DNA from: Lytechinus pictus
Lineage: Eukaryota
Direction of reading: 5' to 3'
DNA length: 64,000 nucleotides
Assembly (NCBI RefSeq): GCF_037042905.1
Contig: NC_087252.1
Coordinates: forward strand, 4,960,001-5,024,000
The notes below the pieces were generated by a model that searched no databases, was not told the origin of the DNA, and was given only the letters and a program-made list of their open reading frames with translations. This document shows positions 21,501 through 27,500 of this stretch, piece after piece. The position numbers and the translations under genes are program-made. Every line of letters begins with the position of its first letter. Position 1 is the first letter of the stretch.

Positions 21501-24500
21501 ATATCTCACACACAGTGCAATTAATAGCAAAATCGAATGACGAGAGCTGTACAGGGGAGGGTGGAATCCCTCTCGCTTAGCCTGGCGGAAATCATTGGAT
21601 ATCGATGGATATCGCCACCTCCACACTAAACTCAACCAACCAACAAATGCAAAACTATGAGCTACTAAATACATTTTTTGTTGTCTTTCAATAATTTTTA
21701 TTTCGGTAGCTTCACAAAACAAAAAAAATCATCATACATAATATACAAATCTTAGATCAGCTCAGAAGGATCTTTTACATTGTCGTAGTGTTCAGACCAA
21801 GGTTTAAGGAGAACGATCCTTTACCCATGCTGCCCCTTCACTTTGGAATGCCACCCTATCATATGTAAATAATTATTTTACACCTAAGTTTAAATCCACC
21901 TTGAAAACATACTTATTTTAAAAGAATTTTTAATGAGTTTAGTGCCACGATTGCCAGCAACCTTCTCTCTTTTCTTTGCCTTTTCTGTCTTCAAAGAGCG
22001 CATAGGGACGCATTAGGCAGTGATATGTGCTAAATAAGAATGTTGGTATTATTTTTAGCAAAAAAAGCAAGAAAAATAAAAATAAACCAAATATATCAAC
22101 AAATATGACAGGTGCACATACATTTATATCTTCTCTAACAACCCCCACATTCAATCACTGAATGGTTATGACATAACTTCTGAATTATTTTTTTATGTTG
22201 CCCCCAAAATGATTTTTTTTTTCATACTTCATTCATATAATTTATAATAATATATAAATTACATGAATGAAGTATGAAAACAAAATTCATGCATCATTTA
22301 ATGAGTAAGTCAATTCAACTTTCCAGTTCCTCAGGCTCAGTTTGATTTTACAAGTAGTCAAGGAAAATACCTAAAAATATACACATACTGGTTTAGTTTT
22401 GCTGTGGTGGTACAGAGGTTTATCACAGGAGGCTATCCGTACGCAGCAATCTACGTCGCAGGCTCAAAACAGGTGTCAGTATTGCAAACAGTGTTAGTAA
22501 AACAGTGATTCAAATCATGATAAAAGTTGATTAAAACTTGATGAAAATAGAAAAGAATAGAATAGTCCAAACGGTGCATTAAGTCACAAAATTTTAACTC
22601 TCGTTGAAAAAGGAATTTTCACTCGAATATCACTGGCTACCAAATAAATTGCAGTGCAGTACAGTGGCAAAAAAAAAAGAATCATTTATTGGGAAAGATT
22701 TGTATTATACACTACTCAAAAAAAGTTAAGGACCACTTTTTAAAACGTACATAAAGATTTTATACAAGGTGTTTTATTTCTGGAAATACCTCAGTACAAC
22801 TGTCCTAAATGTCCTTAAACACGCTGTAATCAATTTCACGCATGGGTGGTTTCAGTTGTTGCACAATGTCTCTCGCATCACTGCACATCCTGAAAAGTGG
22901 GCCCCGAGGGGTATCAGCTACCGACATGAAGTGGTAAAAACGAATGTCTGAGTGTCTTTCAGGCAGTTCAGTAACGAGTGTGACCACCTCCTGCAGCAAT
23001 AACGGCTTCACAGCGCTGTCTCATGGAGCTGATGAGGCGATTGATGTCTCTGACGTCCAGTGCATCCCATGCAGCCTCCAGAGCCACACCCAGCTGCTGC
23101 AGTCCAAGTGGATGGGCTTCGAGCTGCTCGAGACTCCTCCCCATCATGTCCCAGACGTGCTCTATCGGGTTTAAGTCCGGGGACCTCGCTGGCCACTCCA
23201 TACGCTCAATCCCCTGGCCCTCAAGGAACTCGGTCACCACCCTAGCTCGGTGGGCACGGGCATTGTCATCCATGAAAATGATGTTTTGTCCCACATTTTC
23301 TGCAAATGGCACCACTATAGGTTCAAGGACCTCATCCCTGTACCTCACTCCTGTCATTGCTCCCCCTGGGACCACGTAGAGACGAGTACGGTTGGCGTAG
23401 GTGATGCCTCCCCACACCATGACGCTGCCTCCCCCATAACGGTCATGTTCTGCAATACAGGGGTCTGCAAATCTCTCTCCTGGTCGCCTCCAGACTCTCG
23501 AACGTCCATCATTGTGGTCAAGGGAAAATCTGCTCTCATCTGTGAACAGAACTCTACGCCATTGCTGTCTGGTCCATCTGACATGCTCCCGGGCCCAGTT
23601 GAGACGAATTCTTCTGTGAGCAGGGGTGAGTGGGACACACTGAGCTGGCCGTCTGGCATGCATATTGGCTCTGTGAAGTCGGTTACGGATTGTTTGAGTG
23701 GAAACAATCACTCCAGTTGCTGCAGCGAAGTCATTGTTGAGGCGGCGTGCACTGTGAAAGCGGTTGCGGAGGCTGAGATTCGTCAAGTAGCGATCATCTC
23801 TAGGGGTTGTCGAAACTGGTCGGCCACTGCGGGGTCTCTCGGAGTATAGCCCTGTCTCTCGGTGTCTTTGATTTGCTCTGCTAATGACACTGTGTGACAC
23901 GCCCATCATTCTGGCTACTCTTCGCTGACTGAGGCCAGCTTCCAGCATCCCTAGGGCTCTGGCTACATCTGTTTCACTTAGGTGGTGTAGCTGCAGCAAC
24001 TGGAGTGATTGTTTCCACTCAAACAATCCGTAACCGACTTCACAGAGCCAATATGCATGCCAGACGGCCAGCTCAGTGTGTCCCACTCACCCCTGCTCAC
24101 AGAAGAATTCGTCTCAACTGGGCCCGGGAGCATGTCAGATGGACCAGACAGCAATGGCGTAGAGTTCTGTTCACAGATGAGAGCAGATTTTCCCTTGACC
24201 ACAATGATGGACGTTCGAGAGTCTGGAGGCGACCAGGAGAGAGATTTGCAGACCCCTGTATTGCAGAACATGACCGTTATGGGGGAGGCAGCGTCATGGT
24301 GTGGGGAGGCATCACCTACGCCAACCGTACTCGTCTCTACGTGGTCCCAGGGGGAGCAATGACAGGAGTGAGGTACAGGGATGAGGTCCTTGAACCTATA
24401 GTGGTGCCATTTGCAGAAAATGTGGGACAAAACATCATTTTCATGGATGACAATGCCCGTGCCCACCGTGCTAGGGTGGTGACCGAGTTCCTTGAGGGCC

Positions 24501-27500
24501 AGGGGATTGAGCGTATGGAGTGGCCAGCGAGGTCCCCGGACTTAAACCCGATAGAGCACGTCTGGGACATGATGGGGAGGAGTCTCGAGCAGCTCGAAGC
24601 CCATCCACTTGGACTGCAGCAGCTGGGTGTGGCTCTGGAGGCTGCATGGGATGCACTGGACGTCAGAGACATCAATCGCCTCATCAGCTCCATGAGACAG
24701 CGCTGTGAAGCCGTTATTGCTGCAGGAGGTGGTCACACTCGTTACTGAACTGCCTGAAAGACACTCAGACATTCGTTTTTACCACTTCATGTCGGTAGCT
24801 GATACCCCTCGGGGCCCACTTTTCAGGATGTGCAGTGATGCGAGAGACATTGTGCAACAACTGAAACCACCCATGCGTGAAATTGATTACAGCGTGTTTA
24901 AGGACATTTAGGACAGTTGTACTGAGGTATTTCCAGAAATAAAACACCTTCATACCTGCCAACCATTCCGATTTTGGCGGAATTATACCGATTTTTATAC
25001 CTCCATTCCGAATTCCGAATTTTAAAACCAAAATTCCGATTTTTGGGTTAATCAATATAGTGTTGAAATTATTGAAACGGCTGTATGATGCGACTAACGC
25101 ATGCACGGCTCATATCAAGATGCGACTAACGCATAAACAACTGGAGCGCACGGCTACGCAAATGCGCTAGTTTTGCACAGAGCTAGAGAGCGACGTTAAA
25201 CGGCGCGCAAACACTGCTAAGTGCGCAGTTCCATTGTAAATGCATGTGAAAATAACGAGCGTACACGCTACGACCGCACTTAGCGTTGACTTCCGGAAAA
25301 AAATGGCGGCTGACATCGGCTCGCGAAAGTGCCAGTTTTTAGTGAGGACATGTTTTCATAATCCACGAACATCGGAAAAACCGTGAAAAATACACTTTTT
25401 TAGACCCCTTGTTTCGTAACTACGATGTTAAAAATTACCAGTGGTGATATTTTTGACGCGAAATATGGTGATTTAGGTAAGAAAATTTCACCTTTTATTT
25501 GAGGTTTTGCCCATGTCGCCGGAAGATTTTGTAGTGAGGGAGTGAGTTAGTGAATGTGCAGTGTATGTCTAGTGTGTTTGGTGATTTCAGTGGTATATTT
25601 CTGAGCTTCTGCGCTGCCTGCATGCTGCAGCTGCTGCCGAACGGCTGCACACCATACCCCCGCGCCGCCCGGCCAGCCGCGCACCGACGCTACTCTAAGT
25701 TAGATCTATCCCAACGCAATTTTAACATTGATCTGTACTTTATTTTTTGAATAGTTGTCAAATTTTTGAGGAAGAAAAGAGATTATCAAATTTCGATCTC
25801 AAGTTGAGCCTTCGGAGCCGAACGCCAAATCTACTTGCTTCGCTTGCCTAAGCTCCCGGCGCCCGCCGAGTTGCTGCGCCTCAGCCTCCCCGTCTTAGCT
25901 CACCGGCGCACCGCAAGTGCGCATTGCTGGTCGGGCGCATTTTTGTCATGGCTGAAAATCGAAAATCTGCTCTCTTATACCAACAAGCACTTATCCAATT
26001 TAGGTTTTGTCCTTAGTCAGTAACCCCTGTGCGGTGAAATAACATGAATATGATTGTCAATGTTTGGCTTATTTTCTCTTGATATAGGCTGGATAAATGT
26101 TTGATTTTTTGGCACGTCAGTTTTTCATACAGTAAGTTAGGCCCAACTTAGATCTAAATTCATCATAAAAATAGGCCTATGCCTTGGCCCATAACTCAAT
26201 TGAATTATTGAAATTAATTTTTTCTAATTAAAAAGAGAATCTGTGGAGATGAAGATCTGCATCAATCTCACTTTCCACCAATAGAGGGCTCTCAAAAATA
26301 TATTCAAAATTAAAGTTTTTGAGAGCTCTGGTGAACATGAAAAATTCATAGATTTAAATGAAAACAAATCACACCTGCATGAAACTGGGTGTTTTTTGTC
26401 ACAAAAGTGATATTTAAAGACCTTCTTTTAATTGACAAATGATATTAAATTACATAAAGGTAGATTATGTGGGTATATTTGCTTTAAAAAGTGTAGGGAA
26501 ATGCGCTACTCTTACATGCTGAAAATGCAAAGAGCCCCTAGGCCTACCGTTAAAACGGGCCGGACACCCACTTGCTTAAAAAAGTGTAGGGAAATGCGCT
26601 ACTCTTACATGCTGAAAATGCAAAGAGCCCCTAGGCCTACCGTTAAAACGGGCCGGACACCCACTCGGTGCCCTCGTAGTATTGATACTGATTTTTTATT
26701 ATCAAAGGTTGGCAGGTATGCACCTTGTATAAAATCTTTATGTACGTTTTAAAAAGTGGTCCTTAACTTTTTTTGAGTAGTGTATTTAGATGCCTATTCC
26801 ACGCAGCATTAAAAATATGCTGTATTCATATATATCTATTTTTCATTATAGAAAAAAGTTTTGATGTATTATTTTTCTTTTACAGGTACAATAGGAAGAG
26901 TACCCACAAGCTCGCCGAATACAGGGAGCATGAAGAGAGTCTGTACTGGAAATGATCTATCACCACTTGCAGCTGGAAATTAGTGAGTATTTTTCTGAGC
27001 AGAGAAAGGAGAGGGTGAAAAGGAGGGGGAGGGGCACGAAAGATGGGGAGGAGGAATTGGAGAGGGAAATTGACGTTTTTAAACCACCCAATTTGCATGC
27101 CAATTTGTTGTCTATTTGTGCATAATTCCACATGCTTTCGCTTCAGCGTATCTGCAAAATATGCTCCTAATCACCAAATTTGGGGTCAGACAAATATGGG
27201 GAAAAATATACGCTAAATGTAATTTGATTAATTTGGAATTTTATACATGTTTGATGTTACATTAAAGCTGAATGGTGTAGTATTAACACATTAGGCTAGG
27301 GTGTGATCCTCTAGTGACATTTCTTTTTGCATCCCTTTACAGCAAAGTCTCGTCTTCCCAGCCGACGTACCAAACCAACGGCCCATCTACGCCAGGCGAG
27401 AGCAGTATTCCTAGCTCTGTGGAAGAATTAGTGAATGCGTTCAGTTTCTCCCAGCCTGTTCACATGGACAACATGTTGCTTGGTAGTCAACTTCAGTGTA

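What the first reader, a model, noticed from the sequence alone, without database searches (positions are those of the whole stretch)
22710..26782. Tc1 transposon folded into a ~1 kb inverted repeat inside a Chk1 intron: candidate hairpin-RNA silencer locus
Seen: both ends are the same (3') end of the element. Arms 22766-23726 and 23990-24950 (961 bp) are reverse complements around a 263-bp spacer, and I noticed only one substitution (23247/24469, synonymous CGA/CGT). The native 5' end and start codon are gone, and TA flanks both ends. Inference: Chk1 pre-mRNA would carry about 960 bp of dsRNA covering the DD34E domain, a substrate for Dicer or ADAR that could silence this young Tc1 family in trans. 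Known analogy: maize Mu killer, an inverted partial duplication transcribed from a flanking promoter.
Basis: partly seen in the sequence, partly recalled or inferred. Interest (0 to 1): 0.82.

Follow-up and report, generated by a model that had tools for sequence, protein, structure and literature searches.

The report
Fold-back Tc1 transposon in Chk1 intron
A young cut-and-paste transposon sits in an intron of the checkpoint-kinase gene Chk1 as a rearranged copy with two identical tail ends, so the intron RNA could fold into a ~1 kb double strand, but nothing yet shows that this silences the transposon family.

Summary
Arms 22766-23726 and 23990-24950 are reverse complements (961 nt, one mismatch, 23247/24469) around a 263-nt spacer, and TA flanks the element (22710-22782... 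26782).

New here:
- The right arm is interrupted 59 nt from its tip by a 1770-bp nested repeat (24951-26720, 6-bp target duplication), so the true arms are 1020 nt.
- The canonical family element is about 1.9 kb and encodes a 342-aa DD34E transposase. The left unit lacks only the 5' 620 nt (5' repeat, leader, ATG and 8 nt of coding sequence).
- The host gene is Chk1. The intron is 21424-26885, and the element ends 103 nt before the acceptor.

Independent read support for the inner junction 23989/23990 was not obtained. Every transposon contig in four public runs is canonical. Internal evidence (unique flanks in register, TA duplication, private base, nested insertion) argues against misassembly.

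The silencer reading is physically possible (-2221 kcal/mol, 960 of 961 pairs) but untested. No intron RNA, junction RNA or A-to-G cluster was seen, and family RNA is present.

The scan noted such fold-back Tc1 copies before on other DNA of this genome (s1-306781, s1-323381). I read this one as a rearranged, non-autonomous Tc1 derivative that integrated as a unit and is a passive intron passenger.

The parts
22708..22709 (.). Left TA target-site duplication (context A-TA)
   Evidence: All 13 canonical copies from other sources are flanked the same way, A-TA...TA-T.
22710..23988 (-). Near-complete Tc1 unit, antisense to Chk1. It holds the 3' terminal repeat (about 22710-22904), the 3' UTR, the stop codon at 22968-22970, and the coding sequence from the last base of codon 3 to codon 342.
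   Evidence: blastn to the canonical contig L001:1031-2312, 99.6% over 1282 nt. Pfam HTH_38, HTH_Tnp_Tc3_2 and DDE_3. 99% identical to the 342-aa proteins P0001, P0002 and P0123.
22766..23726 (-). Left arm of the uninterrupted 961-nt inverted repeat (codons 91-342 plus the 3' UTR)
23727..23988 (-). Spacer/loop: codons 4-90 (the N-terminal helix-turn-helix part), present only once
23989..23989 (.). Single base A at the novel junction. It matches neither the canonical continuation (C) nor an extension of the arm (C). There is no microhomology of 2 nt or more.
   Evidence: Sequence, loose-end consensus of canonical contigs behind 23988
23990..24950 (+). Right arm: inverted partial copy, sense to Chk1 (codons 91-342, stop at 24746-24748, 3' UTR). 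It carries the private base 24469 T.
   Evidence: All four runs read A at 24469.
24951..26720 (.). Nested non-coding repeat element, 1770 bp. It has 14-nt terminal inverted repeats (CATACCTGCCAACC) and a 6-bp target duplication CACCTT (24945-24950 and 26721-26726), and it contains a 93-nt tandem duplication at 26479-26664.
   Evidence: In one search it is high-copy with many deletion variants, and canonical Tc1 contigs skip it (24944->26721, 6 letters fit both sides).
26721..26782 (+). Outer tip of the right-hand 3' terminal repeat, continuing the right arm after the nested insertion. The full arms are therefore 1020 nt.
   Evidence: Inverted pair I2; blastn
26783..26784 (.). Right TA target-site duplication (context TA-T)
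21424..26885 (+). Chk1 intron that hosts the element: 5462 nt, or 1387 nt without the element. It lies between the last kinase-domain exon (about 21337-21423, ...[10 protein letters not shown]) and the SQ-linker exon 26886-26982.
   Evidence: The acceptor and downstream exons come from spliced mRNA contigs with 0 mismatches. The donor AAAG|GTGAGT at 21423 is inferred from an open reading frame across the join.

Best explanation
This is a genuine, non-autonomous 'two-3'-end' fold-back derivative of a very young, multi-copy Tc1-type (DD34E) transposon about 1.9 kb long.

Structure (shown): a copy that lacks only its first 620 nt (5' terminal repeat, leader, ATG) is joined head-to-head, by a blunt join with one odd base, to an inverted copy of its own last 1020 nt. 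Both termini are therefore the same 3' terminal repeat.

Origin (inferred): because both termini abut a TA duplication in the family's usual A-TA/TA-T context, the composite most likely integrated as one unit, cut and pasted in trans by transposase from canonical copies. It landed in a 1.4-kb Chk1 intron, 103 nt upstream of the acceptor. A 1.77-kb repeat later landed in the right arm, splitting its terminal repeat.

Behaviour (inferred): the element has no promoter or start codon of its own, so it is transcribed only as part of Chk1 pre-mRNA. That intron RNA can fold into a 961-bp perfect duplex with a 263-nt loop. I think the most likely behaviour is that of a passive intron passenger. Its duplex RNA would be made at the low level of Chk1 pre-mRNA and disposed of in the nucleus (editing or degradation), with at most a minor contribution to small-RNA control of the family.
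For: Shown:
- Repeat geometry and the single mismatch.
- Canonical element and breakpoints.
- DD34E and domains.
- TA flanks, and the same A-TA...TA-T context in 13 canonical copies with at least 13 different flanks.
- Nested insertion with target duplication, skipped by canonical contigs.
- Chk1 identity and exon structure.
- Fold of -2221 kcal/mol against about -770 for shuffles, with 960 of 961 in-register pairs.

Against misassembly:
- The two flanks are unique and continue the Chk1 intron in the correct orientation and reading frame.
- The palindrome has a 263-nt asymmetric centre rather than a point of symmetry.
- One arm carries a private base and a nested insertion.

For 'passenger':
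- RNA-type runs of the same species give spliced Chk1 mRNA but no depth on neighbouring introns.
- No junction-crossing contig and no A>G cluster on the arm were seen.
- Family RNA is present at a higher word depth than Chk1.
Against: - No independent read or contig crosses the novel junction 23989/23990. In one search every listed run that held the stretch best, from six coded organisms, stayed at a 0.91 share of the sampled words, as expected if the junction words are missing. In one search all contigs continue canonically past 23988.
- No DNA run of the window's species was served, so presence, zygosity and polymorphism are unknown.
- Contigs drop rare variants and carry no strand, so the absence of junction RNA, intron RNA or editing is weak evidence.
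- Small RNAs were not examined at all.
- Unit transposition is inferred from the flanks only.
Confidence: 0.6

Rival explanations
1. Hairpin-RNA silencer. Chk1-driven transcription makes a ~1 kb transposase-coding duplex. This is diced into siRNAs, or feeds piRNA production, and represses the Tc1 family in trans, as Mu killer and the Ac 'killer' composite insertions do in maize.
For: - The inverted partial duplication covers the catalytic domain.
- The host gene is transcribed and spliced.
- The element has no promoter of its own, so any transcript is a read-through hairpin.
- Maize precedents show that such structures suffice in plants (bioRxiv 10.1101/2020.01.07.897926).
- Scan notes report further fold-back Tc1 copies in this genome.
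Against: - No small-RNA data could be reached.
- No intron or junction RNA was seen in four runs, and there was no A>G cluster.
- Family RNA is still present at a word depth above Chk1 exons.
- Intronic duplexes are nuclear and short-lived.
- Whether this animal dices long hairpins is unknown.
- The carrier status of the RNA samples is unknown.
Confidence: 0.2
2. Formed in place rather than transposed as a unit. Either two canonical copies inserted head-to-head close together in this intron and a deletion removed both 5' parts, or one resident copy was rearranged locally by template switching during repair or replication.
For: - The blunt junction with one odd base and no microhomology looks like end joining of two breaks.
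- The family is dense and active enough for neighbouring insertions: at least 13 flanks in a small sample.
Against: - Only one TA duplication brackets the whole structure, and no host DNA lies between the two units. Two independent insertions would each carry their own TA pair and leave intron sequence, or its loss, between them.
- Local rearrangement of one copy would not recreate a precise 3' terminus next to TA on the side where the 5' terminus had been.
Confidence: 0.15
3. Assembly artefact: a fold-back chimeric read, or a wrong join inside a canonical insertion.
For: No public contig crosses 23989/23990. Long perfect palindromes are hard to sequence and to assemble.
Against: - Fold-back chimeras are symmetric about a point and invert the flank as well. 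Here there is a 263-nt unique centre, the two flanks differ, and they continue Chk1 in frame.
- The arms differ by a private base and a 1.77-kb nested insertion.
- Both termini are of the 3' type, which is only about 82% like the 5' type. A wrong join would therefore have to replace an end that is anchored in unique sequence.
Confidence: 0.05

Closest known systems
Mu killer (maize; Slotkin et al. 2003/2005, cited from my own knowledge and as described in 10.1101/2020.01.07.897926)
   Same: It is a natural inverted partial duplication of a DNA transposon that lacks its own complete gene. A flanking host promoter transcribes it, so a long hairpin RNA of transposase sequence is expected.
   Different: For Mu killer, hairpin RNA, siRNAs and heritable trans-silencing were demonstrated. 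Here none of these was tested. This element keeps two intact transposon termini and a TA duplication, so it looks like a mobile unit rather than a fixed rearranged locus. The host is an animal without the plant RNA-directed DNA methylation machinery.
Ac 'killer' composite insertions from alternative transposition (Wang et al., bioRxiv 10.1101/2020.01.07.897926)
   Same: They are inverted repeats of two truncated copies sharing the same transposon end (the 5' end for Ac, the 3' end here), generated by the transposon's own aberrant activity. One of them is transcribed from a flanking gene promoter.
   Different: The Ac structures sit inside Mb-scale inverted chromosomal duplications, and their fusion points could not be sequenced. 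Here the structure is compact (2.3 kb of Tc1 sequence), the junction is resolved to the base, and there is no host duplication. The superfamily differs too (hAT against Tc1/mariner).
Read-through dsRNA from Tc1 terminal repeats in C. elegans (Sijen and Plasterk 2003) and hairpin-RNA endo-siRNA loci of Drosophila (Okamura 2008; Czech 2008); from my own knowledge
   Same: These are animal cases in which host read-through of inverted transposon or gene-derived repeats yields duplex RNA that feeds RNA interference.
   Different: The C. elegans case uses the short natural terminal repeats of normal copies. The Drosophila hairpin loci are dedicated, conserved genes. Here the duplex is a 1-kb coding-region palindrome inside a rearranged transposon, and processing has not been shown.
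Internally rearranged or deleted non-autonomous Tc1/mariner derivatives and MITEs (for example PMC3814204, listed)
   Same: It is a non-autonomous product of a young autonomous family that keeps functional-looking termini and TA duplications.
   Different: The usual derivatives are internal deletions that keep one 5' and one 3' end. This one replaces the 5' end with a second, inverted 3' part.

Membership tests
Tc1/mariner superfamily, Tc1-like DD34E group | TA target-site duplication | tested here: met
   TA at 22708-9 and 26783-4
Tc1/mariner superfamily, Tc1-like DD34E group | Transposase with paired helix-turn-helix DNA-binding domains plus a DDE catalytic domain with D..D(34)E spacing | tested here: met
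   Pfam HTH_38, HTH_Tnp_Tc3_2 (8e-19) and DDE_3 (3.8e-19). D153, D244, E279, with spacings 90 and 34.
Tc1/mariner superfamily, Tc1-like DD34E group | Terminal inverted repeats ending CA...TG | tested here: met
   The termini are CACTACTC... / ...GAGTAGTG. Canonical copies have terminal repeats of about 198 nt, 82% alike.
Autonomous Tc1 element | Complete transposase gene with start codon and upstream leader/promoter | tested here: not met
   Canonical nt 1-620, including the ATG and 8 nt of coding sequence, are missing from the long unit. The short unit starts at codon 91.
Mu killer / Ac killer type transposon-silencing locus | Inverted duplication of part of the transposon | tested here: met
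   961-nt arms (1020 nt with the tip), one mismatch
Mu killer / Ac killer type transposon-silencing locus | Transcription across both arms from a flanking promoter, giving double-stranded RNA | tested here: inconclusive
   The element is intronic in a transcribed, spliced Chk1 gene. However, there is no depth on the neighbouring introns and no contig across the junction in three RNA-type runs. The fold itself is certain if the RNA is made.
Mu killer / Ac killer type transposon-silencing locus | Small RNAs derived from the arms | not testable with these tools
   The run index works on 31-letter words, and no small-RNA library was offered.
Mu killer / Ac killer type transposon-silencing locus | Reduced transcript level and heritable silencing of active copies in carriers | not testable with these tools
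   Family RNA is present at a word depth of 57-190 in runs of unknown genotype. No comparison of carriers and non-carriers was possible.
Foldback (FB/TU-type) transposons | Long terminal inverted repeats built of short tandem sub-repeats, unrelated to a transposase gene | tested here: not met
   The arms are transposase coding sequence plus 3' UTR, with no tandem sub-repeat structure.

The most novel reading that the evidence does not exclude
This Tc1 family regularly turns itself into two-3'-end fold-backs, for example when transposase pairs the 3' ends of the two sister copies behind a replication fork that is still inside the element. These fold-backs move as units. Whenever one lands in a transcribed intron, as here in Chk1 (a gene active in dividing and germ-line cells), it becomes a hairpin-RNA source that triggers family-wide silencing. 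That would be an animal counterpart of Mu killer and Ac killer, built into the transposition mechanism itself.
Probability: 0.12. Interest if true: 0.85.

Novelty: new variant of a known kind. Interest (0 to 1): 0.5.

Why it matters
How a newly invading DNA transposon is first recognised and shut down in animals is still an open question. [quoted passage not shown]

This locus is a fully base-resolved animal candidate of the same architecture:
- The host promoter is defined (Chk1).
- Two locus-specific tags (the junction 23989/23990 and the base 24469T) let small RNAs or edited reads be assigned to this copy, even though the family is 99.9% uniform.
- The target family is young and apparently still active.

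If scan notes of many such fold-backs in this genome hold, the class would also say something about how Tc1 elements mis-transpose. If the element is inert, it is simply one more rearranged transposon copy in an intron.

Tried and rejected
1. Independent confirmation of the inner junction.
   - Two run searches and one read lay found only canonical contigs.
   - No DNA run of the window's species was served.
   - An exact 33-nt junction pattern is absent from JGI metagenome contigs.
   - The 372-aa ORF across the junction is not on record. The by-reference translation may start with V rather than M, so this blank is weak.
2. Two 372-aa cluster members (P0128, P0134) looked like the junction ORF by length. 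They are upstream-ATG extensions of the canonical gene.
3. Search for other fold-back copies outside the window. 37 fetched contigs are all canonical (1902/1901 or 1736 bp), a 90% relative (1.59 kb), or unrelated (L035, L036). This covers L001-L037. Short-read contigs would break at such repeats, so this says little.
4. No other copy of the Tc1 or of the nested element lies elsewhere in the 64-kb window.
5. Rfam found nothing in 21000-28600.
6. A>G counts per run are no higher in RNA-type runs than in the DNA run, and they lie in the nested repeat, not the arm.
7. Self-priming fold-back as the origin. The 3' end at 23986-23989 has no complement next to 23727, so snap-back priming by microhomology is not supported.
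8. Literature searches found no description of two-3'-end Tc1 fold-backs or of hairpin-derived siRNAs in echinoderms. The library is partial.
9. The species could not be named because run and organism labels are coded.
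Full report
**1. Observation**

The repeat finder on 22000-27500 reports inverted arms 22766-23726 and 23990-24950, 961 nt, 263 nt apart. A base-by-base comparison finds one mismatch, 23247/24469.

A second inverted pair, 22707-22771 / 26721-26785 (65 nt, identical), shows that the outermost termini are also the same sequence.

The mismatch is synonymous: Arg250 is CGA on the left and CGT on the right. 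In all four public runs laid on the region, every contig reads A at 24469. The T is therefore private to this right arm, and the left arm carries the family base.

**2.

The right arm ends at 24950, yet its last 59 nt reappear at 26721/26727-26782. Between them lies a 1770-bp element (24951-26720). It has 14-nt terminal inverted repeats (CATACCTGCCAACC) and a 6-bp target duplication CACCTT.

Canonical Tc1 contigs in three runs jump 24944->26721, with 6 letters fitting both sides. That is the signature of a nested insertion. This repeat is high-copy, with many deletion variants, in the same runs.

The real arms are thus 1020 nt. The Tc1-derived part is 2303 nt and the rest is a later passenger.

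**3. The family**

- The long minus-strand frame carries HTH_38, HTH_Tnp_Tc3_2 and DDE_3. The catalytic residues are D153, D244 and E279, a DD34E arrangement.
- A protein search found 342-aa proteins 99% identical (P0001, P0002; also P0122, P0123).
- Their contigs define the canonical element. It is about 1.9 kb (1902 nt including the flanking A-TA/TA-T), with the ATG 612 nt from the left end and imperfect (82%) terminal repeats of about 198 nt.
- A 1736-nt form lacks one unit of a 5' leader repeat.
- The window's long unit equals canonical nt 621-1902 (99.6% to L001). It differs by 1-5 nt in 1279 from 13 marine-metagenome and Logan copies.
- Those copies have at least 13 different flanks, each with A-TA...TA-T.
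- The family is therefore very young, multi-copy and mobile.
- The canonical protein starts [11 protein letters not shown]. The window copy begins with the last base of codon 3, so the 5' repeat, leader, ATG and 8 nt of coding sequence are gone.
- The inverted partial copy starts at codon 91.

**4. The junction**

Canonical contigs continue behind 23988 with CTTGGCATTG... (loose ends). The window has A at 23989 and then the inverted arm. Both the canonical continuation and an extension of the arm would predict C.

The join is therefore blunt, with one odd base and no microhomology of 2 nt or more. The inner arm ends fall on the 8-nt palindrome GCTGCAGC, which may be chance. I could not derive the mechanism of origin from this.

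**5. Host gene**

- Motif scans found kinase exons on the + strand at about 13.9, 15.8, 17.7 and 18.5 kb, and C-terminal exons at 28.2 and 30.0 kb.
- The exon at 17631-17855 matches human CHK1 at E 5.5e-31; the next kinase family scores 2e-16.
- The exon at 28206-28343 matches the CHK1 KA1 domain 5wi2 at 1.2e-4.
- Spliced mRNA contigs from organism H lie on 27343-27514 and 28206-28345 with 0 mismatches. They show GT..AG joints 26982->27343 and 27514->28206. Organism H is therefore the window's species, and 26886-26982 is an exon.
- Joining a GTGAGT donor at 21423 (...[10 protein letters not shown]) to 26886 keeps the frame open through the conserved SSQP, SFSQP and RMTRFF motifs.
- The intron is therefore 21424-26885. 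The donor is inferred; the acceptor is shown.
- It is 5462 nt long, of which 4075 are the element plus one TA.
- The element ends 103 nt upstream of the acceptor. The long unit is antisense to Chk1 and the partial unit is sense.

**6. Is it real?**

I could not get independent reads across 23989/23990.

- In one search, all fourteen best-holding runs, from six coded organisms, stay at a 0.91 share of the sampled words. That is what is expected if only the junction words are missing.
- No run holds more than 0.58 of the whole locus.
- All listed contigs are canonical.
- The junction pattern is absent from JGI metagenome contigs.
- No DNA run of organism H was served.

Against an artefact:

- The centre is a 263-nt unique segment, not a point of symmetry.
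- The two flanks differ and continue Chk1 in frame.
- The arms differ by a private base and a 1.77-kb insertion.
- Both termini are of the 3' type although anchored in unique DNA.

I put misassembly at about 5%.

**7. How it got there (inferred)**

One TA duplication brackets the whole composite, in the family's usual A-TA/TA-T context, and no host DNA lies between the units. The simplest reading is that the composite was cut at its two identical 3' termini and integrated as one unit, using transposase supplied by canonical copies.

Formation in place is less parsimonious (about 15%). That would need two neighbouring insertions plus a deletion, or a local template switch.

Two scan notes on other DNA of this genome describe further fold-back Tc1 copies, of 2.9 and 2.6 kb. 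One claims about 130 such elements that move as units. I could test only the flank argument. The differing sizes, if correct, would point to recurrent formation.

**8. What it does**

If Chk1 pre-mRNA is made from a carrier allele, the fold is not in doubt. ViennaRNA gives -2221 kcal/mol for 22710-25000, against about -770 for shuffles, with 960 of 961 arm positions paired in register.

Whether this matters is untested. In three RNA-type runs of the species:

- Neighbouring intron bins have zero depth, so pre-mRNA is below what contigs record.
- No contig crosses the junction.
- The only 'other letter' on the arm is the private 24469.
- Per-run A>G counts are no higher than in the DNA run.
- Tc1 word depth (57-190) exceeds that of the Chk1 exons (15-30).

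These are weak negatives. Contigs drop rare variants, they have no strand, and the genotype of the samples is unknown. Small RNAs could not be examined.

I therefore commit to 'non-autonomous fold-back derivative, passive intron passenger whose duplex RNA is a low-level nuclear by-product' at 0.6. I keep the silencer reading at 0.2.

**9. Comparison with known systems**

The architecture matches Mu killer and, more closely, the Ac 'killer' composite insertions. Those are inverted repeats of two truncated copies sharing the same transposon end, made by the transposon's own aberrant transposition during replication. One of them is transcribed from a flanking gene promoter (bioRxiv 10.1101/2020.01.07.897926).

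The differences here are these:

- The structure is compact and resolved to the base.
- It keeps two transposon termini and a TA duplication.
- It belongs to Tc1/mariner.
- It is in an animal.

It is not an FB/TU-type foldback element, because its arms are coding sequence rather than tandem sub-repeats. Membership in the class 'silencer locus' is unproven: only the structural criterion is met.

**10. Verdict**

It is a new variant of a known kind, and the scan has already seen the type elsewhere in this genome. Interest is 0.5. The value lies in a clean, taggable test case for how silencing of a DNA transposon might start in an animal.

Noticed in passing
window 24951-26720: A nested 1770-bp non-coding repeat with 14-nt terminal inverted repeats (CATACCTGCCAACC), a 6-bp target duplication and ATTCCGA-rich subterminal repeats. 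In organism H runs it is high-copy with many internal-deletion variants. Its 93-nt tandem duplication (26479-26664) is absent from other copies (joint 26485->26579). The superfamily was not identified.
   Followed up: partly
L001-L006, L015-L034 (Logan, ENA/TARA marine metagenome contigs); runs: The same Tc1 family, 99-99.9% identical, occurs with many different flanks in TARA Oceans and other marine metagenome assemblies. It also occurs in runs labelled as at least six coded organisms plus echinoderm, marine and fish 'metagenomes'. An annotated transposase of the sea spider Nymphon striatum (KAG1665120.1) is 91% identical in protein. This is a candidate for recent horizontal spread among marine animals, or else one abundant planktonic host.
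   Followed up: partly
L007-L014: A 1.59-kb sister family, about 90% identical in DNA, with 235-nt terminal repeats (93% alike) and a 308-aa called product, in TARA and other marine metagenomes.
   Followed up: partly
L025, L027, L032: Some metagenome contigs show one Tc1 copy abutting the next (...GTAGTGTATATATACACTAC...). This could mean tandem copies, an excised-circle junction or a de Bruijn assembly loop. I did not resolve which.
   Followed up: no
window 26084 (variant in run X25); window 19527, 28010, 37056, 43730, 48530: Another copy of the nested repeat carries a TACATG insertion at a TA (TA -> TACATGTA). That is the Tc1 excision-scar word that earlier scan notes report genome-wide. 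This family's termini (CA...TG) would leave exactly that scar. The window has 5 TACATGTA, against about 2 expected, one of them in the next Chk1 intron.
   Followed up: partly
L015-L034 versus L001: Canonical copies come in two lengths, 1901/1902 and 1736 nt. They differ by one unit of a roughly 166-nt repeat in the 5' leader.
   Followed up: no
window 13876-30023 (+): Partial Chk1 gene model. Kinase exons lie near 13.9, 15.8, 17.7, 18.5 and 21.34-21.42 kb. Linker and KA1 exons are 26886-26982, 27343-27514, 28206-28345 and about 30.0 kb. The last exon(s) and the first exon were not mapped.
   Followed up: partly
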